Shown here piece by piece: positions 2,511 through 22,647 of a stretch of DNA of 64,000 nucleotides. Each line of letters begins with the position of its first letter. Position 1 is the stretch's first letter. The stretch is taken from positions 124,001 through 188,000 of the IMG/VR virus record IMGVR_UViG_3300028275_000006; one strand, written 5' to 3'. The notes under the pieces are model-generated. The model worked only from the letters and a program-made list of their open reading frames with translations, was not told where the DNA came from and searched no databases. The position numbers were made by a program, and so were the translations under genes.

Positions 2511-2882
2511 TTACTCCTTTACAAAATCAACTCTTTCACTGTAATAGCCATTCGATTGACCTAGCCAACGAATGTCCACATAACCCTTGCGAGTTGCAAA
2601 CTTGTAGAAAGTCCATGTGTAAGACTCGTATGCTTCGAAGTCGGCTGGGCTTTCGCCATCAACTTCTTCTGCTATTAGAATCTCTGAACCTACTAAGTCC
2701 TGCAAATCGCCGACTATGCTTTCTATGCTTACGCTTTCGCAACAGTCTTGCTCGTGATACATACGATAGCGTTCGCCATCTGTGGTTTCAAAAACGATCT
2801 CGTCGCCACTCTCGTTGATGTTGGACAAAGTCTTGCCCTTCAACACATCAACGTTACAATATTCTCTGTCCCAATATCCCAT
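2511..2882 (-). CDS. hypothetical acidic phage protein
   Basis: ORF with RBS; YHEQDCCE and SNGYYSE motifs. Confidence 0.7.
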   Translation of the reverse strand: MGYWDREYCNVDVLKGKTLSNINESGDEIVFETTDGERYRMYHEQDCCESVSIESIVGDLQDLVGSEILIAEEVDGESPADFEAYESYTWTFYKFATRKGYVDIRWLGQSNGYYSERVDFVKE

Positions 2883-2891
2883 GATATCTCC

Positions 2892-3110
2892 TTACTGCTT
2901 TCGCCGTTTCATCCAGGTGTAATCTACACCGTCTGGACACTTTCCATCTACAATGCTGTCAGCACCAAACATGCCAACAATTTCGTATTCGCTACTTTTG
3001 ATAGTTACAAATACTGCCAATGTTTTTGCCCAATCCATTGCTGGGCCAAGATTATCAAAATCTCGTTCGTAAACATTCTTGTTTACATCTTTCCATATTA
3101 CTTTATACAT
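2892..3110 (-). CDS. hypothetical protein
   Basis: ORF immediately downstream of promoter 3117-3145. Confidence 0.7.
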   Translation of the reverse strand: MYKVIWKDVNKNVYERDFDNLGPAMDWAKTLAVFVTIKSSEYEIVGMFGADSIVDGKCPDGVDYTWMKRRKQ

Positions 3111-3116
3111 TCAATT

Positions 3117-3145
3117 ATTATATCTTCACTTCAATATTTTGTCAA
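3117..3145 (-). promoter_or_regulatory. sigma70-type promoter
   Basis: TTGACA-17nt-TATAAT. Confidence 0.85.
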
Positions 3146-3146
3146 T

Positions 3147-3221
3147 TGGTCCCGCTACTACGAATCGAACGTAGACTTACTCTTTAGGAGAGAGTCGTTC
3201 TATCCATTGAACTATAGCGAG
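3147..3221 (-). tRNA. tRNA-Arg(CCT)
   Basis: Cloverleaf, loop CT-CCT-AA, encoded CCA. Confidence 0.9.
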
Positions 3222-3231
3222 GGAGGGAATT

Positions 3232-3339
3232 TGGTGTGACCGGGAGGGTTCGAACCTCCAAGGACGGCATATCGCCTAGTCCCGACCCACGGAGTGTTTC
3301 ACAACAGTCCTGGAGCTCTGCCTATTCGCTCACGGTCAC
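3232..3339 (-). ncRNA. atypical 108-nt tRNA-like RNA with expanded anticodon/variable region
   Basis: Acceptor GTGACCG/CGGTCAC-A-CCA, D arm and T arm GGAGG-TTCGAAC-CCTCC; no canonical anticodon arm. Confidence 0.7.
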
Positions 3340-3345
3340 ATACTA

Positions 3346-3374
3346 AGTATATAACCTTTTCAGCAGTTTGTCAA
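3346..3374 (-). promoter_or_regulatory. sigma70-type promoter for the 3339/3221 RNAs
   Basis: TTGACA-17nt-TATACT. Confidence 0.8.
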
Positions 3375-3811
3375 CGGGTTATGAGGTATTCGTAGTTCAC
3401 TGTGTTGTCGTTTTCTTGCAACACACAGGCACCATTTCTGATATGGAACTTGTAGGCCATTTCAGTTTTTGGGCTAAGTGTTACAAAACGATTAACAGTT
3501 GGGAAAAGTTCTTTTATTTGATCCACTACACCAAAAAGTAGCTCTGCGGCCGCACCCGGCGCATAACTCCAAATTGTATAGAAGATTGCTGTAGTTGGTT
3601 CTGTGGGTGTTTTAGCCAAATCTTCAACAGTTGTTGGCACAAAATCGTGCAGACTAACACAGACCATTGCACGTGGTTTTTCGCCTTCTACAGTGGTGGC
3701 GACAAATCTGCTACCGCTAACACGAAATTCTTTGGGAATTTCTGGACGTACTGGATCATCCTTGATATAGTCAAGTAATGGATTAGTAGTTTCTCTGATT
3801 AATGTTAGCAT
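3371..3811 (-). CDS. hypothetical protein, possibly GNAT-like fold
   Basis: ORF preceded by TAAATA; FYTIWSY..GAA and RFVTLSP motifs; fold is a guess. Confidence 0.6.
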   Translation of the reverse strand: MLTLIRETTNPLLDYIKDDPVRPEIPKEFRVSGSRFVATTVEGEKPRAMVCVSLHDFVPTTVEDLAKTPTEPTTAIFYTIWSYAPGAAAELLFGVVDQIKELFPTVNRFVTLSPKTEMAYKFHIRNGACVLQENDNTVNYEYLITR

Positions 3812-3849
3812 ATAACTATTTAGCATTTAGTGGGCAGATTATGGTGTTA

Positions 3850-3924
3850 TGGTGGTAACGGTGAGATTCGAACTCACACCTTGCTCCGTATGAAGGAGGT
3901 GCACGACCATTATGCTACGTTACC
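3850..3924 (-). tRNA. tRNA-Met or Ile2 (CAT), elongator
   Basis: Cloverleaf, paired G1-C72, loop TT-CAT-AC, CCA. Confidence 0.85.
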
Positions 3925-3927
3925 AGA

Positions 3928-4163
3928 TTATTAGTAAGATGTCCCGAGAGTTTTGGTTTGGGTAAGGCCATCCGACGGTGCGATTCGTCCCTCTCTTTGT
4001 CTAGCCCAACATGAAGTTCTTGTAGTCTCAATCCGCTCACCTTGCACCGGCGCTTGATACATATACTCTACAGCATTAAAGTTTATAACTTCAATTAACA
4101 AAAACTTCCGATCTTTGTTAACTCCTTGCGGATGCTTTTAGAACCTTAACTACTTACTAATAA
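3928..4163 (-). ncRNA. candidate stem-closed ncRNA F
   Basis: 11-bp terminal inverted repeat TTATTAGTAAG/CTTACTAATAA; internal hairpins incl. CCGCAAGG. Confidence 0.45.
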
Positions 4164-4165
4164 AA

Positions 4166-4434
4166 GGGGTGGAGAGAGAAAGGCAAGTAATAGACTGGAC
4201 AATGTACAAGCGGGCTCTATAAAGATACCCTTAACAAGTCACAAGGCGCAAAGCACAGGGACCTGTATATTTCCAGTTAGCAACTCACAAAGTCGATTAA
4301 TATATAGAACTGGTTCACACAAGCACGAAACGTTTTCAAGACGTTTTGCCAGTAGTTGATGTTCGGTCTCTATAAGAGATCAAACCTTAGGCATGTAGCC
4401 TAAGTCTGTCTATCCTAATCTCCTTCTCTACTCC
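4166..4434. ncRNA. candidate stem-closed ncRNA G
   Basis: Ends complementary over ~30 nt (GGGGTGGAGAGAGAAAGG..TAGAC / GTCTATCCT..TCTCTACTCC); no convincing ORF. Confidence 0.45.
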
Positions 4435-4463
4435 AGGCTCGGGCTTTCGCCTTTGCCAAAACT

Positions 4464-4537
4464 TGGTTGCGGGACCTGGAATCGAACCAGGATCTAGAGC
4501 TTATGAGACTCTTGAGTTACCGTTTCTCTATCCCGCG
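4464..4537 (-). tRNA. initiator-type tRNA-fMet(CAT)
   Basis: C1:A72 mismatch, loop CT-CAT-AA, CCA. Confidence 0.85.
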
Positions 4538-4541
4538 ATAA

Positions 4542-4676
4542 CTTTATAGGTGCTCTCTGTTCGACTCGAACGAAACCTGCTGAGCTCCTTATCTTCCTGG
4601 CACTTTCGGTGGGTAGTCGACTTAGCACCTAACTCGTGTTATCCAGTGTAGTTCAGCTCAGAGAGCATTTATAAAG
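4542..4676 (-). ncRNA. candidate stem-closed ncRNA A with T-loop-like hairpin
   Basis: Terminal stem CTTTATAAATGCTCTCTG/CAGAGAGCACCTATAAAG; TTCG-TTCGAGT-CGAA hairpin. Confidence 0.5.
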
Positions 4677-4872
4677 TGTCTAGCCACTCCCACCACAGGA
4701 GCCCTAAACCGAGCTGTTACTCTGTCCACTAGCCTTTCCATTTAGACGGTGCTGAGGTCCGCCTTTGTGATTTCTCAAGTCGCTTTAAACAAGCCTTGCG
4801 GTAGATCCAATGCACCGAGCCATTAAGGTGTAGCAATTACCTAACTCTATCACGCTGAGTTAACGCGGGGTC
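4677..4872 (-). ncRNA. candidate structured ncRNA H sharing a motif with the GOLLD-like RNA
   Basis: TAGTGGACAGAGTAACAG (4714-4731) is 15/18 identical to 7212-7229; CCGCAAGG hairpin. Confidence 0.5.
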
Positions 4873-4874
4873 TG

Positions 4875-5447
4875 TTACAGTAAACCTTCTGCTTGCAGAA
4901 CTGCTTCTGTTTTGTCAGACAATTGGATAGTTGTCTGAACATTTAACTCTAGGATTTCATCCTGAAGTTTTTGTTTCTGCTTTTTAGCAGTTGCCACTCT
5001 ACGACGGAATCCGTCTAGATCTTCACGAGTGAGCACACTAGTGTCTACTGTGTCGTTGTAGCCATAGATGCTACGACGGTTTTCGCTTTTGTCGTTACGG
5101 ATCTTGTCCAAACGACCTGCTACAACCTTTGCGCTTTCGCGAACGGTCTTACTAGCCAATCCGTTGTAGAATTGGATTTGTTTTTCTAGATGTGCAACAT
5201 CGGCCAATCTAGTGTCGATTCTAACTTCTGTGTTAGCACCGCTGACACTTTTACGAATCTCGTAAAGTGCTTCCACTAACGCATCTCTGCGTGTAAGGTT
5301 GTCGCAGAGTGTTCCTGCAACTTTGGAAATTTCTTGTTCCGCTTCTTGGAACTCGTTGATTTTTACTGTGGTCTCAAACTGGAAACCTTTGACGGTATCG
5401 TTGATACTGTTCTGAAGTGCATTTGCCTTACGTAGGGAGATATTCAT
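4875..5447 (-). CDS. coiled-coil hypothetical protein
   Basis: Start MNISLRKANALQ with RBS; heptad-rich; loosely reminiscent of DIP1984-type proteins. Confidence 0.7.
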   Translation of the reverse strand: MNISLRKANALQNSINDTVKGFQFETTVKINEFQEAEQEISKVAGTLCDNLTRRDALVEALYEIRKSVSGANTEVRIDTRLADVAHLEKQIQFYNGLASKTVRESAKVVAGRLDKIRNDKSENRRSIYGYNDTVDTSVLTREDLDGFRRRVATAKKQKQKLQDEILELNVQTTIQLSDKTEAVLQAEGLL

Positions 5448-5513
5448 TTGTTTTTCCTTTAATGTTTCTATTATACAATCTTTTAAATCTAAATCAATGC
5501 CTTTTGGCAAAAC

Positions 5514-5589
5514 TGGAGCGGGAGACGAGGTTCGAACTCGCGACATTTACCTTGGCAAGGTAATGCTCTACCAACTGAGCTACTCCCGC
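5514..5589 (-). tRNA. tRNA-Gly(GCC)
   Basis: Canonical cloverleaf with CCA. Confidence 0.95.
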
Positions 5590-5637
5590 ATATGAAGAAC
5601 CTAAGGCAAAGTTTATAACTTATCCAAAGGCCATATA

Positions 5638-5713
5638 TGGTACACGGTACGGGAATCGAACCCGTCTTACTGACGTGAAAGGCCAGTGTCCTAAACCGAT
5701 AGACGAACCGTGC
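5638..5713 (-). tRNA. tRNA-Glu(TTC)
   Basis: Canonical cloverleaf with CCA. Confidence 0.95.
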
Positions 5714-5719
5714 ATTACT

Positions 5720-5795
5720 TGGCTCCCCAGGGTGGGATCGAACCACCGACACCCTGATTAACAGTCAGGTGCTACTACCGCTGAGCTACTAGGGA
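5720..5795 (-). tRNA. tRNA-Asn(GTT)
   Basis: Canonical cloverleaf with CCA. Confidence 0.95.
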
Positions 5796-5802
5796 ATAAA
5801 CT

Positions 5803-5877
5803 TGGTACCTGGTGACAGTTTCGAACTGCCGACCCTCTCGGTGTAAACGAGACGCTCTACCACTGAGCTAACCAGGC
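5803..5877 (-). tRNA. tRNA-Val(TAC)
   Basis: Canonical cloverleaf with CCA. Confidence 0.95.
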
Positions 5878-5887
5878 AAACTAACAT

Positions 5888-5964
<77 letters not shown>

Positions 5965-5969
5965 AATGA

Positions 5970-6045
5970 TGGAGCGGGAGGCGAGAGTTGAACTCGTCTA
6001 TTTCAGTTTGGAAGACTGACGTGTAACCACAAACACTTCACCCGC
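5970..6045 (-). tRNA. tRNA-Gly(TCC)
   Basis: Cloverleaf, loop CT-TCC-AA, CCA. Confidence 0.9.
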
Positions 6046-6051
6046 ATATTT

Positions 6052-6135
6052 TGGTGCCCCAGGAGAGACTCGAACTCTCACGGCTCTCGCCACTGGCTTC
6101 TAAGACCAGCGTGTCTACCATTCCACCACCAGGGC
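6052..6135 (-). tRNA. tRNA-Leu(TAG)
   Basis: Class II cloverleaf with long variable arm, CCA. Confidence 0.95.
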
Positions 6136-6136
6136 A

Positions 6137-6940
6137 TTAACTGACAATACTATTTAAGTATTCCTGAATTGTCGTTGCAATTTTTTCTTGCACAGACAAT
6201 TTAATTTTTGCATTCTCACCATTAGCACTCATATACTGTTTTCCGTATTCAGTACAATCTATACCAGTGTGCATAAACTCTTTAAAAATTTCTGAGTTGT
6301 CAGGATTAGGATCTCCAAACCTAACAGTCGTCCATTTAATATTTTGAGAATCTAAAAACTTAATTAACATATTGTAACCATTTCTATGTCTACGAATATG
6401 CCAATCTTTGCTTTGACTTTTTTGAAAAGCAATACCGTTTAATCGCTTTTTATGAACTTCAATTGGATATCTATCTGGATTCCATTCTCCGTCTACATAA
6501 TTTTCACGTTCAAATACATATCGTTGATTGTTATATTTGAAACTGTGTGCTATATGACTAAACGTGTAATCTGTAACTAATACATGATCCGGTTTAGGAT
6601 TCTCTGCTAGGTACTGTTTTAATCTTTTGTGATGACCTATAAAATGTCCACCGTTAATAGATATATTAACTACATTGGAAACATTTAAGAAATTAGGCCA
6701 TGCGGCTTTTTGTTCTTCTTCCCATAGATAATGCCAAACAACATTTTCCATATTGCCATTGGGCATAGGTGTTGTAACATTGTTTTCTTTTCTATGTTTT
6801 AGATACCATTTAAAAACACTTCTAAAATCATTATGGAAACGTAGACTCCAAGTCCTCGGAGCATCGTCGTTGACTATGTCACCAGCCAAACAATTATTGC
6901 CATTACTTTGGCAATCTCCTAAAATTAAAAGTGTTTTCAT
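6137..6940 (-). CDS. hypothetical AT-rich protein with GDSL-like N-terminus, inserted in tRNA array
   Basis: 267 aa ORF; LILGDCQSNG resembles the SGNH block I motif. Confidence 0.65.
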   Translation of the reverse strand: MKTLLILGDCQSNGNNCLAGDIVNDDAPRTWSLRFHNDFRSVFKWYLKHRKENNVTTPMPNGNMENVVWHYLWEEEQKAAWPNFLNVSNVVNISINGGHFIGHHKRLKQYLAENPKPDHVLVTDYTFSHIAHSFKYNNQRYVFERENYVDGEWNPDRYPIEVHKKRLNGIAFQKSQSKDWHIRRHRNGYNMLIKFLDSQNIKWTTVRFGDPNPDNSEIFKEFMHTGIDCTEYGKQYMSANGENAKIKLSVQEKIATTIQEYLNSIVS

Positions 6941-6954
6941 ATTAATAGTTATCT

Positions 6955-7031
6955 TGGCGCACCGTAGGGGACTTGAACCCCTGGCCTCCGACGTGACAGG
7001 CCGGCGCTCTGACCAACTGAGCTAACGGTGC
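6955..7031 (-). tRNA. tRNA-Asp(GTC)
   Basis: Canonical cloverleaf with CCA. Confidence 0.95.
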
Positions 7032-7036
7032 AAATT

Positions 7037-7116
7037 CTATTCTGAAACACACTAACCAACTACCAGAAGCATTTATAATGCCGTTATTCGGTTCGAGCTA
7101 ATGTGTTTTAGAATAG
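7037..7116 (-). ncRNA. candidate stem-closed ncRNA C
   Basis: 20-nt terminal stem CTATTCTAAAACACATTAGC/GTTAGTGTGTTTCAGAATAG with one A:C mismatch. Confidence 0.5.
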
Positions 7117-8005
7117 TGCTAACGCTGAGATTATACGTTAGCCAATAGTGCCTCTAGCATTATAGTCAGCCTTGCGAGCCAACCTTCTCTAGACATCCAC
7201 ATAAGCCATTACTGTACCTATGTCCACTATCAGCATCGCCGTTTTTAAAGACAGGCAGTAGTCTTGTCGCCATATGCTATTCTACGCTATCTACTCCGTT
7301 GACCTTGCGAGCCATTCAGCGGCGCTAACCACTTACGAAACTTCCAGCATAAACAGATTTCACCTTGCGAGCTACGTCTGACTCGATTACCTTGCGGCTC
7401 GAGTATTAGATGCTTTTCACATATGACCGAGGCAGTCTTTGCATTTTATAATCGATAGTTGGGATCGAACCAACAGTCCATTGCTTAAGAGGCAATTGCG
7501 TTACCATTACGCTATATCAAACCTACCGCGATGAGCTGCCTCTGTTGCTCAATAACCTTTTGGATTACTGAATACAACTCACCACATACCTTTTGTCTCG
7601 CGGACTACTCAGTGATATTTCACGATCAATGTCCTGCATCAAAACAGTCCACTAACCATTAATATTGCATACAAGCCCTTAGGAGCGACCCCTTGGACAA
7701 ATACACTACCCTTTCTCATACCAATTCGCAAGTTGGTTTTGTTAGGAAGTCAGCACCACCCGTTACTTTTCATGCACCCTGGTTCCCTTGCGGGCCAGTC
7801 GATACACATTCTTTCCCTAACACTTGCTTCATTGTTACATCCACCGGTCTTCTCAGTGAACGCTACCTCGCGGTAGTGAGCAGGCTTGTTTACATGAACC
7901 ATTACTGGCGGAGTTGCGTAGGCTTACCTCCTTTGGGTTGATCACTCAACTTATTCTTCGTCAACGGCGAACCGCCAACAGGATAATAAACTACCCTTAA
8001 ATTTT
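7115..8005 (-). ncRNA. giant structured ncRNA, GOLLD-like, containing a tRNA
   Basis: ~900 nt without credible ORF; many GNRA-capped hairpins (CTCGCAAGG x3, CCGCAAGG x2, CCGCGAG x2); inside a phage tRNA cluster; boundaries approximate. Confidence 0.7.
7450..7521 (-). tRNA. tRNA-Lys(CTT) embedded in giant ncRNA, no encoded CCA
   Basis: Intact D, anticodon (ATTGC-CT-CTT-AA-GCAAT) and T arms; weak acceptor stem. Confidence 0.8.
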
Positions 8006-8171
8006 TACCATTAAAAAATAACATTACACCCTATGGGATGAAACGTATTTCTGAGTGGAGTTCGATTCTCCTCATAAGCCATTGTTCACGGTTTTCTCAG
8101 AAGGGTAAGATGGCCTTATCCTTCATAAGTCTATGCGTCCATAGACGATACCCGTCAATGCTATTTCTTAA

Positions 8172-8257
8172 TGGTGGATGCGGCTGGAGTCGAACCAGCA
8201 GTGCCGTAAGGCGGCGGATTTACAGTCCACTGGGGTTACCAATTTTCCTACACATCC
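8172..8257 (-). tRNA. tRNA-Tyr(GTA)
   Basis: Class II cloverleaf with CCA. Confidence 0.95.
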
Positions 8258-8344
8258 ATATCTGCTTGAAATTTTTAAAGAACTAGGTTAATTTCTTAAC
8301 TAGTCTCTATTGTATATGAACTTTAGAAACTAGTCAAGACATTT

Positions 8345-8439
8345 TGGCAGTGAGTAAGGGATTCGAACCCTTGATCCCCGTTTTTGCAGGAATGCCTTCT
8401 TAGCAGGAAGGTGCCTTCGACCAGCTCGGCCAACTCACT
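8345..8439 (-). tRNA. tRNA-Ser(GCT)
   Basis: Class II cloverleaf with CCA. Confidence 0.95.
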
Positions 8440-8447
8440 ATATTTGT

Positions 8448-8476
8448 ATTATACGATCAACTGTTAAACAAGTCAA
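8448..8476 (-). promoter_or_regulatory. internal sigma70-type promoter in tRNA array
   Basis: TTGACT-17nt-TATAAT; a similar TTGACT/TACAAT site lies near 8310-8338. Confidence 0.75.
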
Positions 8477-8483
8477 CACCTTT

Positions 8484-8573
8484 TGGCCGAAGCGGTGAGA
8501 TTCGAACTCACGGACCCTTTCGGATCGTCTGTTTTCAAGACAGGTGCAATAAACCGGACTCTGCCACGCTTCG
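8484..8573 (-). tRNA. tRNA-Ser(TGA)
   Basis: Class II cloverleaf with CCA. Confidence 0.95.
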
Positions 8574-8619
8574 TTGTTTTACTTGTATAATTCGTTGTAG
8601 ATAGAATCTGCTACAAATG

Positions 8620-8697
8620 TGGTACCCCTGCTCCGATTCGAACGGAGAGAACTTCTCCTTTTGAGAGAGACGACTTTACCAATTTGTCCACAGGGGT
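8620..8697 (-). tRNA. tRNA-Leu(CAA), short variable loop
   Basis: Loop CT-CAA-AA, 6-nt variable region, CCA. Confidence 0.85.
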
Positions 8698-8702
8698 ATA
8701 TC

Positions 8703-8776
8703 TGGTGCTCAAGGAAAGAATCGAACTTTCGATTGTGTCGTACCAAGACACTGGTATACCATTTACCTACAAGAGC
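8703..8776 (-). tRNA. tRNA-Thr(GGT)
   Basis: Loop TT-GGT-AC, two acceptor mismatches, CCA. Confidence 0.8.
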
Positions 8777-8778
8777 CT

Positions 8779-8850
8779 TGGCGCCTCTGAGTAGATTCGA
8801 ACTACTATAACCTGGTTTAGAAGACCTGGCACTGCTCCATCAGCAGAGGC
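8779..8850 (-). tRNA. tRNA-Arg(TCT), reduced D arm
   Basis: 72 nt, loop CT-TCT-AA, CCA. Confidence 0.8.
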
Positions 8851-8851
8851 A

Positions 8852-8928
8852 TGGTACCCTTGGTTGGATTCGAACCTACACACAACGGATTTTAAATCCA
8901 TTCGCATTACCAATTAGCGTACAAGGGC
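8852..8928 (-). tRNA. tRNA-Leu(TAA), short variable loop
   Basis: Loop TT-TAA-AA, 5-nt variable region, CCA. Confidence 0.85.
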
Positions 8929-8935
8929 ATAATTA

Positions 8936-9011
8936 TGGTGCCGCCCCTTGGGATCGAACCAAGTTCCTCGGTGCTTCAAACCGGTGCAATGACCACATTT
9001 GCTAAAGCGGC
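8936..9011 (-). tRNA. tRNA-Phe(GAA)
   Basis: Cloverleaf, loop TT-GAA-GC, CCA. Confidence 0.9.
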
Positions 9012-9017
9012 GATATT

Positions 9018-9092
9018 TGGGGTGAAGCCGGGAATCGAACCCTGCCTTACTGTTTCACAGACAGCCGTGCGGACCACTACACTAGCAACACC
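9018..9092 (-). tRNA. tRNA-His(GTG)
   Basis: G-1:C73, loop CT-GTG-AA, CCA. Confidence 0.9.
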
Positions 9093-9094
9093 AT

Positions 9095-9171
9095 TGGCCG
9101 GCCCTGAGAGACTCGAACTCCCAACCTCCAGTTTCGAAGACTGGCACTCTAATCCATTGAGTTAAGGACCG
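9095..9171 (-). tRNA. tRNA-Arg(TCG)
   Basis: Cloverleaf, A20, CCA. Confidence 0.92.
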
Positions 9172-9178
9172 TTAAAAT

Positions 9179-9252
9179 TGGCAGGCCTACCAGGACTCGA
9201 ACCTGGAACGACTGAGTCAAAGTCAGTTGTGTTACCATTACACCATAGGCCA
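9179..9252 (-). tRNA. tRNA-Gln(TTG)
   Basis: Cloverleaf, weak 1:72 pair, CCA. Confidence 0.93.
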
Positions 9253-9262
9253 ACAGATTGAA

Positions 9263-9475
9263 TTTGTAAGTAGTTGCCCCATCGTTATAGCAACCATTCA
9301 CCCATGTATATAAAGCCGGCTGGGACTCGGTACGTCACTTGGGATACTAGTCCAGTTAGCAACCAATCTGCAGGGATCTTCCGATCCCCCGGGAGTTGAA
9401 CCCGTCCCCTTTTACTATTAAGGTAGTTCGAACTTACCTACAATAGCGTGACATTCTCTTGCTGACACTTACAAA
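9263..9475 (-). ncRNA. candidate stem-closed ncRNA E
   Basis: Terminal TTTGTAAGT/ACTTACAAA; internal CGGG-TTCAACT-CCCG T-arm-like hairpin and GGGATCGGAAGATCCC hairpin. Confidence 0.5.
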
Positions 9476-9478
9476 ACT

Positions 9479-9553
9479 TGGTGCCCCAGGATGGAATCGA
9501 ACCACCACACCCTGCTTACAAAACAGGACCTCTACCACTAAGGATACAAGGGC
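9479..9553 (-). tRNA. tRNA-Thr(TGT)
   Basis: Cloverleaf with CCA. Confidence 0.92.
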
Positions 9554-9558
9554 AAAAT

Positions 9559-9636
9559 TGGTCTCCACGGTACGATTCGAACGTACAGCCTCCTGACTCC
9601 AGATCAGGCCGTCTACCAGATTGACATTACGCAGAG
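9559..9636 (-). tRNA. tRNA-Pro(TGG) variant with C33 and A37
   Basis: Stem CCTGA/TCAGG, loop TC-TGG-AG, CCA. Confidence 0.75.
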
Positions 9637-9646
9637 ATAAAAATAA

Positions 9647-9722
9647 TTGCGACCGAAGGACTCGAACCTTCGCGGTAATCTAGAATGCCCCGGCAAGGCC
9701 GGTTAACCCACCATTGTCGCAA
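9647..9722 (-). pseudogene. tRNA-like element without CCA or valid anticodon arm
   Basis: TTGCGAC/GTCGCAA stem plus perfect T arm GAAGG-TTCGAGT-CCTTC. Confidence 0.5.
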
Positions 9723-9725
9723 ATT

Positions 9726-9800
9726 TGGTGGAGGCCGAGGAAATCGAATCCTTCTAGACATCTTCCTTGCAAGGGAAGACCGTAGCCCACTACTGCCCCC
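9726..9800 (-). tRNA. tRNA-Ala(TGC), reduced D loop
   Basis: G3:U70, loop CT-TGC-AA, D hairpin GTAG-TGGG-CTAC, CCA. Confidence 0.8.
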
Positions 9801-9885
9801 AAATTGGTGTTAGTTTCTATACCACCCATTGAAACTAACAAACATTGAGAGAACATGGATGAACCCACAAGATCTCTATTTGCTC

Positions 9886-9960
9886 TGGTATAGCGTACGG
9901 GGATCGAACCCGCCTAGTCACCTTGAAAGGGTGATGACCTCCCCAGAAGTCGAACGCTAT
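9886..9960 (-). tRNA. tRNA-Glu(TTC), second copy
   Basis: Cloverleaf, loop CT-TTC-AA, CCA. Confidence 0.9.
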
Positions 9961-9966
9961 GTAAAT

Positions 9967-10040
9967 TGGTTCCTGGACCGAGAATTGAACTCAGAATGAC
10001 CGGTTATCAGCCGATTGTTATACCATTTAACTATCCAGGA
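9967..10040 (-). tRNA. tRNA-Ile(GAT)
   Basis: Cloverleaf with CCA. Confidence 0.93.
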
Positions 10041-10130
10041 ATAATACTATACAAAAAGAAACTAACGACAATGCGCTATGCACCCAGAGTCTATAGTTCC
10101 TGGCTGTGGTTAGTTTGTTTTTATACACTA

Positions 10131-10225
10131 CCATATGGAAGCACTCTTATGCCTTTTTCGTCATAAGATGGTGGCCCGTCCTTACTACTGACGCTATGCG
10201 ACCAGTTAAGAATGCTTTCATATGG
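10131..10225 (-). ncRNA. candidate stem-closed ncRNA B
   Basis: CCATATGAAAGCATTCTTA/TAAGAGTGCTTCCATATGG with one A:C mismatch; begins at the CCA of tRNA-Lys(TTT). Confidence 0.5.
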
Positions 10226-10297
10226 TAGGGGCACAGAGAATCGAACTCTGATTTACGGGTTAAAAGCCCGCTACTTTAACCATTAAGTTATACCCCC
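10223..10297 (-). tRNA. tRNA-Lys(TTT)
   Basis: Cloverleaf with CCA. Confidence 0.93.
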
Positions 10298-10300
10298 ATA

Positions 10301-10376
10301 TGGTCCCTGCTGTGAGATTCGAACTCACACCTCATTGATTAAGAGTCAAGTGCGCTACCATTGACGCTAAACAGGG
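10301..10376 (-). tRNA. tRNA-Lys(CTT)
   Basis: Cloverleaf with CCA. Confidence 0.92.
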
Positions 10377-10438
10377 TTGTACGTATTGATTTGATTTTAC
10401 GTGCCAACCCTAGACCATACGGGAGATCTAGAGTGACA

Positions 10439-10459
10439 CTAACGTTTAGCACGTTTCAT
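10439..10459 (-). CDS. micro-ORF MKRAKR-amber
   Basis: Strong SD AAGGAGAG; TAG stop leads into a long hairpin. Confidence 0.4.
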   Translation of the reverse strand: MKRAKR

Positions 10460-10471
10460 GCTACTCTCCTT

Positions 10472-10534
10472 TTAATATTTTTTCAAAACTTGATACAACA
10501 CGAACATTATAACTAACACTACAAGTACTGCCAT
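10472..10534 (-). CDS. 20-aa hydrophobic micro-protein MAVLVVLVIMFVLYQVLKKY
   Basis: SD TAAGGAG, single TM-like stretch. Confidence 0.55.
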   Translation of the reverse strand: MAVLVVLVIMFVLYQVLKKY

Positions 10535-10547
10535 AATATTCTCCTTA

Positions 10548-10637
10548 TGGTCCCCCGTTGAGGAATCGAACCTCATCCTGGACCTTATCTAGATTAATCG
10601 GTTATAAGCCGACCTGCTCTCCATGAGCTAACGGGGG
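10548..10637 (-). tRNA. tRNA-Ile(TAT) with 21-nt variable insertion
   Basis: Stem GTCGG/CCGAT, loop CT-TAT-AA, 90 nt, CCA. Confidence 0.8.
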
Positions 10638-10645
10638 ATATAACC

Positions 10646-10723
10646 TGGAGCAACGGGTCAGATTTGAACTGACGGTTTTACGGATTTGCAATCCGTTGCA
10701 TTGGGCCTCTCTGCCACCGTTGC
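10646..10723 (-). tRNA. tRNA-Cys(GCA)
   Basis: Cloverleaf, U73, CCA. Confidence 0.93.
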
Positions 10724-10728
10724 ATTAT

Positions 10729-10803
10729 TGGCGTACCCCCAGGGACTCGAACCCCGACTAGCAGTTTTGGAGACTGTCGTGCTGCCATTAACACTAGGGA
10801 TAC
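10729..10803 (-). tRNA. tRNA-Trp(CCA)
   Basis: Cloverleaf, G73, CCA. Confidence 0.93.
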
Positions 10804-10826
10804 ATAACACTCTCTTTCGAAAGTGT

Positions 10827-10888
10827 GTATTAAAGCATACTACTCATCGGCTACTGCCATTTGATTGTTCGGCAGTATGCTTTAATAC
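10827..10888 (-). ncRNA. candidate stem-closed ncRNA D
   Basis: Perfect 15-bp stem GTATTAAAGCATACT/AGTATGCTTTAATAC around a 32-nt loop. Confidence 0.45.
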
Positions 10889-11003
10889 GCTACCTTTTTA
10901 CACATTCTAGTTATCGCCTAGAACTTACCATCCGGTAGGCCGCCCACATTAAGCCCATGTTTTACGTGCAGGCAGGGTCGCGTTCCCTATAACACGTTTG
11001 AGA

Positions 11004-11174
11004 TTAGTCTTGCTCTACGAGCTCAACTTCTCTCTTGTAAAGTGCTGTGTGATAAGCACGAGCACGATTAAACTTTTCTTCGATGAGTTTTTCAAAAGCA
11101 TCGTCGTCCAGTTCATGCTCACTTAGCACTTTGGCACTTTTCTGTTTTCTAAAATCTTCAAAATTCATTTTCAT
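11004..11174 (-). CDS. 56-aa hypothetical protein (not in ORF track)
   Basis: MKMNFEDFRKQKSAKVLSEHELDDDAFEKLIEEKFNRARAYHTALYKREVELVEQD; first gene after the attenuator. Confidence 0.6.
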   Translation of the reverse strand: MKMNFEDFRKQKSAKVLSEHELDDDAFEKLIEEKFNRARAYHTALYKREVELVEQD

Positions 11175-11192
11175 TTCCAAATCTTACAAAAC

Positions 11193-11224
11193 AAAAAACC
11201 CTGGGTTTTTAGTCCAGGGTTCTT
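11193..11224 (-). terminator. intrinsic terminator of putative attenuator
   Basis: AAGAACCCTGG-ACTAAAAAC-CCAGGGTTTTTT. Confidence 0.8.
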
Positions 11225-11247
11225 AAAAGTTATTGTGTATGTTACTG

Positions 11248-11409
11248 TTAACTTACACGATCCTCCAAGAACCCTACGATAATCTCAGGTGTACGATCAT
11301 TACCTAGACCTAGCCCGACATTACTAAACTGTGACCAATAGGCGGACATACATGCCGGCGCTTTGGCTTGTTTAGATATCGTTTGTCTATGTAAACTAAT
11401 CGTTTGCAT
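11248..11409 (-). CDS. 53-aa putative leader peptide
   Basis: MQTISLHRQTISKQAKAPACMSAYWSQFSNVGLGLGNDRTPEIIVGFLEDRVS; contains the antiterminator segment 11267-11276. Confidence 0.6.
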   Translation of the reverse strand: MQTISLHRQTISKQAKAPACMSAYWSQFSNVGLGLGNDRTPEIIVGFLEDRVS

Positions 11410-11467
11410 TTTGTTTCTCTTTTTCTTACCTTCTTAAAAGTTGTAGCGGAATTGCTACTGTCTTTGT

Positions 11468-11589
11468 ATTGTAATGCCTTTCAACATCTTTGTCAACATC
11501 TTTTTGTCTTTTTTGGACAACCTAATGTTTTGTGGAAAGTGATTGCTTTACAATATTTGTATTATATGAGTATTTATAAAACTTGTCAA
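11468..11589 (-). promoter_or_regulatory. tandem sigma70 promoters driving leader and tRNA array
   Basis: TTGACA-17-TATAAT (11561-11589) and TTGACA-17-TACAAT (11468-11496). Confidence 0.85.
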
Positions 11590-11646
11590 TACCTATGTTG
11601 AAATGTGGCGATTTTGCAACATTTTGAAAACCGCCACACTTTTGTA

Positions 11647-12165
11647 TTAACCGTTTAGTACTTTTGCTAGACTATTGATCACTGCGGCAATACGTCCGAT
11701 GTCACGAAGTTGTTCTACGGTGTAGCCTTCCTTCTTCAATGTTTCGTAGTGCGCCTTAACACAGAAATGACACTTGCCAACAATACTTGCGGCAAGACTG
11801 TATGCTTCAAAGCGAGCCTTGGTAGTTCCGCCATGGCTTGCGATAGCGTTCATGCGTAACTGTGCTGGCAAGCCCTTTAGTTGCTCATCGTCTGCCATCT
11901 CAACATATGGATACCAAACGTTGTTCTGTGCCATAATTGAACCAGCGGTCATCGCGGCATCACGTTCTTTTTCGTCTGTGATGTTGCTCATGATGAAACT
12001 AATCAATTTTCCATTGCCGGTGCTCATAGCCGCGGCCAATGCACAACCTTCTGCTTCTACAACATCTGATAGTGTACTACGCTTGATTACTGCATCCAGA
12101 TTTAGTTTTGTGTCCTTGGCGTATTCTGGTAAACCTTCTTTTAATTGATCAACCCATTGTGTCAT
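11647..12165 (-). CDS. ahpD: alkyl hydroperoxide reductase AhpD
   Basis: N-terminal LPEYAKDTKLNL, SIVGKCHFCVKAH CxxC motif; same operon as ahpC. Confidence 0.9.
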   Translation of the reverse strand: MTQWVDQLKEGLPEYAKDTKLNLDAVIKRSTLSDVVEAEGCALAAAMSTGNGKLISFIMSNITDEKERDAAMTAGSIMAQNNVWYPYVEMADDEQLKGLPAQLRMNAIASHGGTTKARFEAYSLAASIVGKCHFCVKAHYETLKKEGYTVEQLRDIGRIAAVINSLAKVLNG

Positions 12166-15926: not shown

Positions 15927-16000
15927 TGGTGCGCTAGACAGGAATCGAACCTGCTATCGGGAGTTTAGAAGTCCCTGCCTATCCATTGAGCTTCAAGCGC
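15927..16000 (-). tRNA. Arg(TCT)-derived tRNA; best-paired register gives anticodon CTA
   Basis: 74 nt; GGGAC-TTCTAAA-CTCCC arm; A20; CCA. Confidence 0.7.
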
Positions 16001-21632: not shown

Positions 21633-21712
21633 GTGATCTTTCTATGAAATAAAACTGCGATACTGTGTATTATAGGCTCGGACAGGGCATCTGTCAATGT
21701 GTTTGGTAAAAT

Positions 21713-21735
21713 AAAAAAGGGCCCGAAGGCCCTTT
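21713..21735 (-). terminator. terminator after tmRNA
   Basis: AAAGGGCC-TTCG-GGCCC hairpin followed by T6. Confidence 0.8.
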
Positions 21736-21739
21736 GGTT

Positions 21740-22066
21740 GTTTGGGTTACAAGGTAAGTCCTACCCCGGAGTTGCAGTTTCTTAGGCTGCTACTAGACCA
21801 TTGTCGGCTGTGAAGCCTTCAACAGTGAAGTACTCAAATGTAGATGCGTTTGCATTTACTAGTTTTGCTTGATTTACGGTCATCGCCTACCGTGTTGCCG
21901 TCTCTACTATCTACCCCTGTCGAAACCATGGCAGGCCCATCATAAAAACACAATACCAAAGTAAATTTACAATGAATACCAAAGTAAATTTATGTCCTTA
22001 TGGTGGACCTGGCGGGAGTCGAACCCGCGTCCAGAAGTCCTTCGCTTTGAAGGGATTACAACAATT
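21740..22066 (-). ncRNA. ssrA: circularly permuted (two-piece) tmRNA
   Basis: Acceptor piece ending GGTTCGACTCCCGCCAGGTCCACCA (22001) precedes coding piece starting GGGCCTG (21938); G3:U70; tag frame 21782-21853 ANASTFEYFTVEGFTADNGLVAA*. Confidence 0.9.
21952..21992. repeat. 18-nt tandem direct repeat in tmRNA intervening segment
   Basis: AATACCAAAGTAAATTTA at 21952-21969 and 21975-21992. Confidence 0.9.
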
Positions 22067-22068
22067 CT

Positions 22069-22647
22069 TTAAACGCCTGCCTTTGCTAATGTGCCAAATA
22101 TCCAAGGTTTTGGATCTAAGTCAATTGTCCAAGATGTCGGTTCATTTCTCATATCTTTTTTGTACACAATATTTATTTGGTCGTGTGTTAGTTTGACTAA
22201 GAAGCCGTCTGTTAATTGTTTTAGATTAGCCTTAACTGTTGCGTAATCTACAAAGGCAACAGCGAATGTTCCTTTAATTTGGACTATCATTAAATGATTA
22301 AAAACTTTGTCTAGTGTAGTTCTTTGATTCTTACTTTCGTAAACATTTTTTAATTTAAGACTGATTGTCTTTTTAGGAGTTCCTGACTTTGCGTAGAACA
22401 AAGGTTCGTTGCCAGTTTTAACTTCTACGTCGCCATTGGTCCAATCGGTAAATTTTATATCGTAATCGCGAACGTCAGTCCACTCGATGTTCTTTTTATG
22501 ATTAGATAATTGCATTGCCGCAATAATGAATTTTTCTTTCATCATTCGATTTGTGGATTCATTTAATACTGTCTGATGACAGATGTTATTACAAGCATCT
22601 GAAAACTTGTCAATATCTACCCAATCTAAAAATTCATTGTACTGCAT
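22069..22647 (-). CDS. hypothetical protein, possible PD-(D/E)xK nuclease fold
   Basis: AT-rich; D..GDVEVKT motif. Confidence 0.55.
   Translation of the reverse strand: MQYNEFLDWVDIDKFSDACNNICHQTVLNESTNRMMKEKFIIAAMQLSNHKKNIEWTDVRDYDIKFTDWTNGDVEVKTGNEPLFYAKSGTPKKTISLKLKNVYESKNQRTTLDKVFNHLMIVQIKGTFAVAFVDYATVKANLKQLTDGFLVKLTHDQINIVYKKDMRNEPTSWTIDLDPKPWIFGTLAKAGV

What the first reader, a model, noticed from the sequence alone, without database searches (positions are those of the whole stretch)
7115..8005. ~900-nt giant ornate ncRNA (GOLLD-like)
Seen: no credible ORF, dense nested hairpins with at least seven GNRA-capped stems on the minus strand, and a terminal GCTAACG/CGTTAGC hairpin, inside a tRNA operon. 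Known: GOLLD RNAs are ~800-nt phage RNAs from lakes and Lactobacillales, found next to tRNAs, with unknown function. Membership of GOLLD rather than a new class is my inference and has not been tested.
Basis: partly seen in the sequence, partly recalled or inferred. Interest (0 to 1): 0.8.

Follow-up and report, generated by a model that had tools for sequence, protein, structure and literature searches.

The report
GOLLD RNA carrying a tRNA-like insert
This stretch encodes a genuine ~900-nt GOLLD RNA, a known giant phage RNA that builds protein-free cages; here it is very abundant in river RNA samples and carries a crippled tRNA-like piece between its two halves, but what GOLLD RNAs do remains unknown.

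Summary
Window ~7100-8000 (minus strand) is a bona fide GOLLD RNA. Rfam's GOLLD model matches full-length at 7122-7585 (207 bits, cut-off 150, E 4e-57). The remaining 5' ~410 nt, which Rfam does not model, align with 63 distinct relatives. They show 119 predicted pairs, 95% canonical, 79 with compensatory changes, against at most 8 in shuffles. Eight GNRA-capped hairpins, the terminal hairpin, the lack of ORFs and the tRNA-array setting are all confirmed. In three river metatranscriptomes, contig depth over 7167-7954 is 3,000-25,000, against 0-85 in the flanks; a DNA run is flat. This indicates a discrete, very abundant RNA.

The linker between the two domains holds a tRNA-Lys(CUU)-like element (7449-7522). 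It lacks CCA: 0 of 56 distinct embedded tRNAs have it, against 968 of 1003 free tRNAs in the same loci. Its acceptor stem is weak, and a covarying pseudoknot helix clamps it. Embedded tRNAs in GOLLD linkers are already published, so this is a new member of a known kind, in an uncultured river phage of at least 270 kb.

Cage formation is inferred by homology, and function is unknown. Unannotated copies in Caulobacter and Sinorhizobium phages offer a tractable test system.

The parts
7100..8000 (-). Whole GOLLD RNA, about 900 nt. The 5' end is predicted near 7996-8000 and the 3' end between about 7100 and 7120. The ends are not mapped.
   Evidence: Homology with 63 distinct relatives spans about 8008-7100. 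Rfam GOLLD covers 7122-7585. RNA contig depth is 3,000-25,000 over 7167-7954 and far lower outside.
7586..7997 (-). 5' domain, not modelled by Rfam. It is a multi-branched set of about 20 helices with GNRA, UUCG and A-rich loops.
   Evidence: RNAalifold on 64 sequences gives 119 pairs, 95.2% canonical, of which 79 have compensatory changes. 300 column shuffles give a mean of 3.9 and a maximum of 8; partner-shifted controls give 3-6. The domain aligns with Phosso and CcrMagneto.
7528..7585 (-). Pre-linker hairpin (first element of the Rfam model). Outer stem 7585-7578/7535-7528, inner stem 7578-7563/7557-7544, conserved CAAAA loop 7562-7558.
   Evidence: Rfam alignment. The outer stem is 100% canonical with UA/AU and UA/CG swaps. 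The inner stem has 14 pairs, 9 of them covarying.
7429..7542 (-). Linker loop closed by a pseudoknot helix. Bulge GAGGCAG (7542-7536) pairs with CUGCCUC (7435-7429), enclosing the tRNA-like element. The invariant motifs GUAGGUU (7526-7520) and GCAAAGACUG (7442-7433) flank that element.
   Evidence: The helix is 100% canonical in 64 sequences. Pair 7539:7432 is UA in 31, GC in 30, CG in 2 and AU in 1. Invariant runs are listed.
7449..7522 (-). Embedded tRNA-Lys(CUU)-like element. The cloverleaf and the D/T-loop elbow are intact. There is no encoded CCA. The acceptor stem has 1 mismatch and 2 G-U pairs, and its first three bases belong to the invariant GUAGGUU motif.
   Evidence: ARAGORN and Rfam tRNA, 62.5 bits. 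31 of the window's 32 free tRNAs end in CCA and this one does not. Family-wide, 0 of 56 embedded tRNAs have CCA against 968 of 1003 free ones; acceptor stems average 3.96 Watson-Crick pairs against 6.13.
7121..7447 (-). Conserved 3' domain. It includes the long-range helix 7427-7419/7277-7269 and four GCAA-capped hairpins.
   Evidence: Rfam GOLLD alignment. 94 pairs, 96.1% canonical, 59 covarying against a maximum of 8 in shuffles.
7121..7146 (-). Terminal hairpin (GCUAACG/CGUUAGC) whose loop carries the family-wide UAAUCUCAG motif.
   Evidence: Last hairpin of the Rfam model; sequence read directly.
8001..8040 (-). Likely own transcription start region. A terminator-like hairpin (8040-8027) and U-run are followed by TGgTAAAAAT (8010-8001), an extended -10-like element about 5 nt before the conserved GGG (7996-7994).
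   Evidence: Terminator scan. In many relatives a TTGACA-17-TAYAAT promoter sits at the equivalent place. RNA depth rises about 50-fold across this point. The promoter call for the window itself is inference.
3147..10803 (-). Surrounding phage tRNA array: 31 tRNA genes on the same strand, nearly all with encoded CCA.
   Evidence: ARAGORN and Rfam.

Best explanation
Shown: window ~7100-8000 (minus strand) is the gene for a GOLLD RNA of an uncultured river jumbo phage (at least 270 kb). The phage encodes rIIA, ribonucleotide reductase, DnaK, 32 free tRNAs (31 of them in the array around the RNA) and a tmRNA. The RNA has a full-length match to the family model, a conserved covarying 5' half, and very high abundance in river RNA libraries. 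The linker holds a tRNA-Lys(CUU)-like element without CCA and with a degenerate acceptor stem. That element is bracketed by invariant GOLLD motifs and clamped by a covarying pseudoknot helix.

Inferred from solved relatives (env-38 14-mer, S. agalactiae 3'-domain decamer): the RNA folds into a 5' 'cap' domain and a 3' 'ring' domain and self-assembles without protein into a dihedral multimeric nanocage. The linker, and so the tRNA-like element, points into the cavity.

Inferred: it has its own promoter inside the tRNA array.

Committed mechanism (about 0.25 for this last step): the element is not matured into a decoding tRNA. It is a built-in tRNA mimic, and the cage presents many copies of it to bind or shield against a tRNA-recognising factor during infection, such as an anticodon nuclease, a processing enzyme or a modifying enzyme.
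For: Family membership: Rfam GOLLD, 207.2 bits against a cut-off of 150, E 4.1e-57, model 1-416/416. Ten of ten tested relatives, and also Phosso and CcrMagneto, are full-length GOLLD hits at 166-226 bits.

Covariation: 266 pairs, 96% canonical, 168 covarying against 6-11 in shifted controls. 5' domain 79 and 3' domain 59 covarying pairs, against a maximum of 8 in 300 shuffles. Pseudoknot and outer stem are each 100% canonical with swaps.

Expression: RNA contig depth is 2,864-25,040 across 7167-7954 in three metatranscriptomes. It is 0-6 over the ORF at 6182-6969 and 1.6-18 at 8152-8348. The DNA run stays at 6-54. RNA contigs of depth 1,142 and 2,083 span the whole tRNA element and cross its 3' junction (records 12 and 27).

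tRNA mimic: no CCA in 0/56 embedded against 968/1003 free tRNAs, and 0.93 against 4.3 G-C pairs in the acceptor stem. Invariant GUAGGUU overlaps tRNA positions 1-3.

Promoter: consensus sigma-70 promoters in relatives at the homologous spot.

Literature: GOLLD forms a 14-mer cage with the linker inside, and tRNAs are sometimes found in the linker (10.1101/2024.12.08.627333). A pseudo-tRNA inside mycobacterial GOLLD was not detectably expressed on its own (PMC6582537). A tRNA-Phe in J13/15 and an 'inhibited storage' idea have been proposed (PMC12990946).
Against: - Rfam models only the 3' half. I could not compare the 5' half with the archetypal env-38 or Lactobacillales 5' domains, only with Rfam-positive relatives found through one motif, which form one clade.
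- Oligomerisation is not testable here. Relatives differ in stoichiometry (10 against 14) depending on helices I could not map one-to-one.
- Contig word depth is a poor expression measure. It sums related strains (about half the laid contigs are 95-99% alike) and carries no strand information. RNA ends are not mapped, and no contig bridges the tRNA 5' junction by 31 nt or more.
- Single-sequence folding energy is not significant (z -1.55).
- The tRNA element still scores 62.5 bits as a tRNA, so maturation with CCA added by an enzyme cannot be excluded.
- The Asn/Lys bias of inserts (45/56) holds only in this freshwater clade. More distant members carry Thr or Gly and mycobacteria carry Phe, so no single anticodon target explains the family.
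Confidence: 0.85

Rival explanations
1. The insert is an ordinary tRNA-Lys(CUU) gene. RNase P and RNase Z excise it, CCA is added enzymatically, and GOLLD then exists as two separate halves, or the cage serves as 'inhibited storage' that releases tRNA later.
For: It scores 62.5 bits as a tRNA, with an intact D/T elbow and anticodon loop. The storage idea is published (PMC12990946). Strain variants with a different tRNA cassette in otherwise >=95% identical flanks (joint 7447/7520 and loose ends, in both RNA and DNA runs) show that the cassette is exchanged like a gene.
Against: 0 of 56 embedded elements encode CCA, although 96.5% of free tRNAs in the same phages do. The acceptor stem is degenerate, and its 5' strand is an invariant GOLLD motif that cannot covary with the 3' strand. 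The phage already has a normal tRNA-Lys(CUU) at 10301-10376. Abundant RNA contigs still join the element to the 3' domain. In a mycobacterium no separate product was detected (PMC6582537).
Confidence: 0.2
2. It is a new class or subclass of ornate RNA that only resembles GOLLD.
For: The 5' 410 nt are outside the Rfam model. The literature describes GOLLD 5' domains as variable.
Against: The model match is full-length, not partial, and far above the cut-off. The same two-domain layout, linker position and L27-type terminal loop are present. Relatives sharing the 5' domain are all GOLLD by Rfam.
Confidence: 0.04
3. It is a ROOL RNA or another known large RNA, such as a group I/II intron, an RNase P-like RNA or an OLE RNA.
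For: ROOL shares the phage and tRNA-array context (PMC5737381).
Against: No such family reaches E 0.1 in 2800-11700 with permissive filters.
Confidence: 0.01
4. It is a non-functional spacer of decayed tRNA genes in a tRNA array, and the abundant RNA is only stable processing debris.
For: It lies in a tRNA array and contains a tRNA-like piece. The folding z-score is weak.
Against: 168 covarying pairs across sequences 51-82% identical to the window. The same RNA occurs in phages of Caulobacter and Sinorhizobium and in Thalassospira and Acidobacteria genome contigs.
Confidence: 0.01

Closest known systems
GOLLD RNA (Rfam RF02032); archetype env-38 GOLLD, cryo-EM 14-mer nanocage (Kretsch et al., 10.1101/2024.12.08.627333)
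   Same: Full-length match to the family model; more than 800 nt; a 5' domain and a conserved 3' domain joined by a variable linker; A-rich hairpin loop before the linker; conserved terminal UAAUCUCAG loop; phage origin; position next to tRNAs.
   Different: Carries a tRNA-like insert in the linker; the paper says only that tRNAs are 'sometimes present' in GOLLD linkers. About 70 nt longer. The 5' domain was not compared directly. Multimer state is untested.
Mycobacterial / Mycolicibacterium GOLLD in tRNA arrays (PMC6582537; PMC12990946)
   Same: Lies inside a ~30-gene tRNA array. A pseudo-tRNA is embedded in the linker (J13/15). The embedded element is not seen as a separate product.
   Different: There the insert is tRNA-Phe-like and the element is chromosomal, acquired horizontally with an HNH endonuclease. 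Here it is Lys(CUU)-like in a lytic-type jumbo phage, with no HNH gene detected nearby. Expression here is very high rather than weak.
Unannotated GOLLD copies in Caulobacter phages (CcrMagneto, Karma, Swift, Ccr5, RBC57) and Sinorhizobium phage Phosso
   Same: Rfam-positive (169 and 187 bits). Same motif after the linker. CcrMagneto also carries an embedded tRNA-Lys(CUU) without CCA and a permuted tmRNA next to it.
   Different: Only 67-69% identical over the conserved parts. The records annotate only the tRNA or nothing. Their neighbouring proteins are unrelated to the window's.
ROOL RNA
   Same: Large ornate phage RNA near tRNAs that also forms an RNA-only cage (an octamer in the structure solved in that paper).
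   Different: Unrelated sequence and fold; no match here.
Viral and cellular tRNA-like structures (plant-virus TLS, the tRNA-like domain of tmRNA)
   Same: A tRNA-shaped module built into a larger RNA and not used for decoding (a resemblance from general knowledge, not tested here).
   Different: Those mimic the acceptor/CCA end and are aminoacylated. This one keeps the anticodon arm and elbow but has lost the CCA and the top of the acceptor stem.

Membership tests
GOLLD RNA (RF02032) | Match to the curated covariance model at or above its gathering score, over the whole model | tested here: met
   207.2 bits against 150, E 4.1e-57, model 1-416/416, window 7122-7585 minus strand.
GOLLD RNA (RF02032) | Conserved 3'-domain secondary structure maintained by compensatory changes | tested here: met
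   94 pairs, 96.1% canonical, 59 covarying against a maximum of 8 in shuffles. The long-range helix 7427-7419/7277-7269 is 100% canonical.
GOLLD RNA (RF02032) | Large, structured but less conserved 5' domain, giving a total length above 800 nt | tested here: met
   About 410 nt with 119 pairs, 79 of them covarying; total about 900 nt. Correspondence to the published P1-P13 numbering was not tested.
GOLLD RNA (RF02032) | Variable linker between the domains, which may hold a tRNA | tested here: met
   The tRNA-Lys(CUU)-like element at 7449-7522 falls in the unpaired linker columns of the Rfam alignment.
GOLLD RNA (RF02032) | Phage or prophage location, often next to tRNA genes | tested here: met
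   31 tRNAs on the same strand. Phage genes rIIA, RNR and tail fibre are present. Identical IMG/VR viral contigs reach 270 kb.
GOLLD RNA (RF02032) | Expressed as a discrete RNA, raised during phage growth | tested here: inconclusive
   RNA contig depth is 3,000-25,000 against 0-85 in the flanks, with flat DNA. Ends, strand and timing are not resolved.
GOLLD RNA (RF02032) | Protein-free homo-oligomeric nanocage | not testable with these tools
   Inferred from homology only.
ROOL RNA | Match to the ROOL covariance model | tested here: not met
   No hit up to E 0.1 in 2800-11700.
Canonical phage tRNA gene (for the embedded element) | Cloverleaf with D/T-loop elbow and 7-nt anticodon loop | tested here: met
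   Rfam tRNA 62.5 bits; ARAGORN Lys(CUU).
Canonical phage tRNA gene (for the embedded element) | Encoded 3' CCA, as in the other tRNAs of this genome, and a fully paired 7-bp acceptor stem | tested here: not met
   It ends ...AUCGAUUA with no CCA, while 31 of the window's 32 free tRNAs have CCA. Family-wide the count is 0/56 against 968/1003. The stem has a U-U mismatch and two G-U pairs; family means are 3.96 against 6.13 Watson-Crick pairs.

The most novel reading that the evidence does not exclude
The linker element is a selected tRNA mimic rather than a tRNA gene. It keeps the anticodon arm and elbow but has lost the CCA and the top of the acceptor stem. A pseudoknot holds it rigidly, so that a GOLLD cage carries ten or more copies. 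In this freshwater phage clade it almost always carries an Asn or Lys (NUU) anticodon, and it is swapped as a cassette between strains. The cage would then work as a high-copy decoy or shelter against host factors that attack or process particular tRNAs, for example anticodon nucleases, with the insert's identity tracking the local host threat. That would give GOLLD its first mechanistic function.
Probability: 0.15. Interest if true: 0.8.

Novelty: new member of a known kind. Interest (0 to 1): 0.4.

Why it matters
GOLLD was described in 2009 and shown in 2024-25 to form RNA-only cages, yet it still has no known function. This copy does not change what GOLLD is, but the work around it gives three usable leads.

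1. In natural river communities the RNA is orders of magnitude more abundant than neighbouring phage genes. That argues for a stoichiometric or structural role rather than a rare regulatory one.
2. The embedded tRNA is systematically CCA-less, has a degenerate acceptor stem, and is locked in place by conserved motifs and a pseudoknot. This favours 'built-in tRNA mimic' over 'tRNA gene that happens to sit there'.
3. The same RNA, unannotated, is present in cultured Caulobacter crescentus phages (CcrMagneto, Karma, Swift and relatives) and in a Sinorhizobium phage. Deletion, processing and cage assays are therefore feasible in a standard laboratory host.

Tried and rejected
- Single-sequence folding. 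z-scores of -1.55 and -0.38 are not decisive for a 900-nt RNA, so I did not use them as evidence.
- RNAalifold paired 7585-7580 with the 3' tail 7118-7113 (91% canonical, almost no covariation). I rejected this in favour of the Rfam outer stem 7585-7578/7535-7528, which is 100% canonical with swaps. The two true helices form a pseudoknot that RNAalifold cannot draw.
- A second, less biased anchor pattern at the 3' end (ATAAT..TAATCTCAG) returned mostly chance matches. Only 2 of 119 loci were GOLLD by nhmmer, so it gave no independent sample of linkers.
- About 7 of the 11 genome contigs matches to the first motif were also chance.
- fold_alignment on the 64-sequence alignment was cut off before its pair table, so pair counts come from my own scripts.
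- Megablast of 24 kb of the window against cultured phages found nothing. rIIA is at most 39% identical to any cultured phage, so host and taxon stay open.
- A 190-aa helical protein (4878-5447) is the commonest neighbour of GOLLD in this clade. It has no homologue next to the Caulobacter or Sinorhizobium copies, so I did not treat it as a GOLLD partner.
- TAG recoding, suggested by the suppressor-like tRNA(CUA), is not supported.
- Weinberg 2009 and Morgado 2020 are not in the held library.
- I could not map the published helix numbers and inter-chain bridges (L20, L21a/b and others) onto this sequence without the figures or the env-38 sequence.

Full report
**Observation**

The region 7115-8005 has no credible ORF. 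The longest are 82 aa on the plus strand (TTG start) and 50 aa on the minus strand, among many short chance ORFs. It lies inside a run of 31 tRNA genes, all on the minus strand, between 3147 and 10803. The terminal GCUAACG/CGUUAGC hairpin is at 7146-7121. In the covariation-supported structure the minus strand carries eight GNRA-capped hairpins and one UUCG hairpin. A strict count of GNRA loops on stems of at least 3 bp gives 5 on the minus strand and 0 on the plus strand. Folding energy of the single sequence is not distinguishable from shuffles (z -1.55 and -0.38), so the case rests on comparative evidence.

**Identity**

Rfam's GOLLD model (RF02032) matches 7122-7585 on the minus strand over all 416 model positions, at 207.2 bits against a gathering score of 150 (E 4.1e-57). 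With permissive thresholds no ROOL or other large-RNA family appears between 2800 and 11700. The Rfam model covers a pre-linker hairpin, the variable linker and the conserved 3' domain. It does not cover the 5' domain, so I tested that separately.

**Relatives**

A BLASTN search of cultured phages found weak matches (67-69% identity) in Sinorhizobium phage Phosso and in eight Caulobacter phage records (CcrMagneto, Karma, Swift, Ccr5, RBC57). Only a tRNA-Lys, or nothing, is annotated there. The two records I scanned with Rfam, Phosso and CcrMagneto, are full-length GOLLD hits (187 and 169 bits).

A 22-nt motif at the start of the 3' domain retrieved 101 IMG/VR viral loci. Of these, 79 held the full region and 64 were distinct. 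Their identity to the window is 51-82%, median 76%. Four viral contigs are identical to the window here, the longest 270 kb. Ten of ten loci I submitted to Rfam gave full-length GOLLD hits at 166-226 bits. They included the most divergent ones and two bacterial genome contigs, from Thalassospira xianhensis and a Pyrinomonadaceae MAG.

**Structure and covariation**

RNAalifold on the 64 sequences, projected on the window, gives 266 pairs that are 96% canonical. Of these, 168 change on both sides while staying paired, against 6-11 when partners are slid by 1-2 columns.

| Region | Pairs | Canonical | Covarying pairs | Shuffle maximum (300) |
|---|---|---|---|---|
| 5' domain (7997-7586) | 119 | 95.2% | 79 | 8 |
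| 3' domain (7447-7121) | 94 | 96.1% | 59 | 8 |

The shuffle mean for the 5' domain is 3.9, and only 3 of its pairs are invariant. The structure was derived from the same alignment, and the sequences are related, so these numbers overstate independence. Even so, the gap to every control is very large.

RNAalifold mis-paired 7585-7580 with the 3' tail. The Rfam outer stem 7585-7578/7535-7528 is 100% canonical with UA/AU and UA/CG swaps. The bulge 7542-7536 pairs with 7435-7429, also 100% canonical; one pair is UA in 31 sequences and GC in 30. Together these form a pseudoknot that closes the linker into a loop of about 100 nt.

**The insert**

Inside that loop lies a tRNA-Lys(CUU)-like element (7449-7522; 62.5 bits). 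Its elbow and anticodon loop are intact. However, it has no encoded CCA, while 31 of the window's 32 free tRNAs do. Its acceptor stem has a U-U mismatch and two G-U pairs. A normal tRNA-Lys(CUU) exists at 10301-10376.

Across all fetched loci, 0 of 56 distinct embedded tRNAs end in CCA, against 968 of 1003 free tRNAs. Embedded acceptor stems average 3.96 Watson-Crick pairs and 0.93 G-C pairs, against 6.13 and 4.3 in free tRNAs. The first three tRNA positions belong to an invariant GUAGGUU motif, and an invariant GCAAAGACUG follows the element. The top of the acceptor stem is therefore GOLLD sequence, not tRNA sequence.

In this clade the inserts are Asn(GUU) 25, Lys(UUU) 13, Lys(CUU) 6, Arg(UCU) 5 and others 7. 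Free tRNAs in the same loci are only about 8% Lys or Asn. More distant members carry Thr or Gly inserts, and the literature reports Phe in a Mycolicibacterium. The Asn/Lys bias is thus clade-limited and may partly reflect shared ancestry.

**Expression**

Contigs of three river metatranscriptomes and one DNA run were laid on 5000-10900. Summed contig depth was as follows.

| Interval | RNA runs | DNA run |
|---|---|---|
| GOLLD body, 7167-7954 (four bins) | 2,864-25,040 | 16-54 |
| ORF, 6182-6969 | 0-6 | 7-8 |
| Upstream of the RNA, 8152-8348 | 1.6-18 | 17.5 |
| 5' edge bin, 7955-8151 | 69-326 | 22 |

RNA contigs of depth 1,142 and 2,083 span the whole tRNA element and cross its 3' junction with more than 31 nt on both sides. 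On the 5' side they reach only 26 nt beyond it.

A 'joint' at 7447/7520, and loose ends carrying other tRNA-like letters, occur in both RNA and DNA runs. They are co-occurring strains with a different tRNA cassette in the same backbone, not splicing.

Caveats: contig depth is a crude measure, sums close relatives and is unstranded, and holes prove nothing.

**Transcription unit**

Many relatives have a consensus TTGACA-17-TAYAAT promoter ending about 7 nt before the conserved GGG at the RNA's start. The window instead has a terminator-like hairpin and U-run (8040-8027), followed by TGgTAAAAAT (8010-8001). This, together with the roughly 50-fold depth step, suggests an independent start near 7996-8000. 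That is inference.

**Mechanism**

By homology with solved GOLLD structures, the RNA should form a two-domain protomer that self-assembles into a dihedral RNA-only cage, with the linker inside. The env-38 RNA forms a 14-mer and the S. agalactiae 3' domain forms a decamer. The conserved A-rich hairpin loop before the linker and the terminal UAAUCUCAG loop, both implicated in tertiary or quaternary contacts in those papers, are present here. Cage formation itself is untested.

For function I commit, at low confidence, to the tRNA-mimic reading: the element is not matured but is presented in many copies by the cage. The main rival is the published 'inhibited storage and release' idea. What argues against that rival is the absence of CCA, the degenerate acceptor stem, the redundancy with a normal tRNA-Lys(CUU), and the joined RNA contigs. 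None of these is decisive.

**Comparison and novelty**

GOLLD in phage tRNA arrays, with tRNAs or pseudo-tRNAs in the linker, is already described. This is a new member of a known kind. I did not find three points in the searchable literature:
- the family-wide loss of CCA and acceptor pairing in the inserts;
- the clamp formed by the pseudoknot and invariant motifs;
- the presence of GOLLD in cultured Caulobacter and Sinorhizobium phages.

These are leads, not proofs.

**Genome context**

The window comes from an uncultured river phage. It encodes rIIA, ribonucleotide reductase, a DnaK-type Hsp70, a CHASE2-cyclase and a tail-fibre protein. It has no close cultured relative, so the host is unknown.

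Noticed in passing
window 21691-22154 (-): The phage encodes a permuted (two-piece) tmRNA: Rfam tmRNA_permuted 138 bits and beta_tmRNA 129 bits. ARAGORN reads the tag peptide as ANASTFEYFTVEGFTADNGLVAA. Caulobacter phage CcrMagneto also has a permuted tmRNA, directly beside its GOLLD (L002 2198-2517).
   Followed up: partly
window 15927-16000 (-): A tRNA with anticodon CUA (amber-suppressor type; ARAGORN calls it 'Pyl'; Rfam tRNA 38.4 bits). Reading TAG through does not lengthen ORFs more than reading through other stops does, and TAG ends only 2 of 57 long stop-free stretches. The code is therefore standard, with TAG avoided.
   Followed up: yes
window 9334-9530 (gap 9253-9478 between tRNA-Gln and tRNA-Thr): A second RNA-depth peak in the metatranscriptomes (517-1,741, against DNA 41), in a 226-nt gap with no Rfam family. 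The gap contains a T-arm-like GGGUUCAACUCCC motif. Folding z is -1.1. It may be another small RNA or a decayed tRNA.
   Followed up: partly
window 9563-9635 (-): An extra weak tRNA-like hit (31.6 bits) that ARAGORN does not call.
   Followed up: no
window 4878-5447 (-): A 190-aa helical protein with no Pfam, PHROG or NCBIfam hit; the protein atlas points to DUF6847-like viral clusters. It is the most frequent protein neighbour of GOLLD in this clade: 35 of 88 distinct loci, same strand, starting a median 1.4 kb after the start of the 3' domain. It is absent next to the Caulobacter and Sinorhizobium copies. The listed ORF start at 5546 overlaps tRNA-Gly, so the real start is probably the Met at 5447.
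   Followed up: partly
window 8006-8171 (-): The 165-nt stretch between tRNA-Tyr and GOLLD is conserved in the closest relatives (L062, L074, L075, L103). It ends in a terminator-like hairpin and U-run at 8040-8011.
   Followed up: partly
window 28432-30483 (-): A phage-encoded CHASE2 sensor domain fused to an adenylate/guanylate cyclase domain (Pfam 128 and 52 bits; PHROG 35576, function unknown).
   Followed up: no
window 42987-44852 (-): A full-length DnaK-type Hsp70 (Pfam HSP70, 855 bits) in a phage genome.
   Followed up: no
window 57841-59469 (-): A tail-fibre-like protein with an Mtd_N (major tropism determinant N-terminal) domain and a pectate-lyase-like fold. I did not look for a diversity-generating retroelement.
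   Followed up: no
window 9019-9092 (-): tRNA-His is the only free tRNA in the window without an encoded CCA; it ends ...CACCCC.
   Followed up: no
window 7447/7520; runs X20, X21 (RNA) and X1 (DNA): Co-occurring strains in the same river samples carry a different tRNA cassette between flanks that are at least 95% identical. The tRNA module is therefore exchanged within an otherwise conserved GOLLD backbone.
   Followed up: partly
L105 (Thalassospira xianhensis NZ_JPWA01000001.1) 4923-5395; L113 (Pyrinomonadaceae MAG) 3293-3775; L114 and L108 (Hyphomicrobiales MAGs): GOLLD copies of the same subgroup sit in tRNA arrays of bacterial genome contigs, probably prophages. Their embedded tRNA-like inserts are Thr or Gly. 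L105 and L113 are Rfam GOLLD hits; L114 and L108 were identified by nhmmer only.
   Followed up: partly
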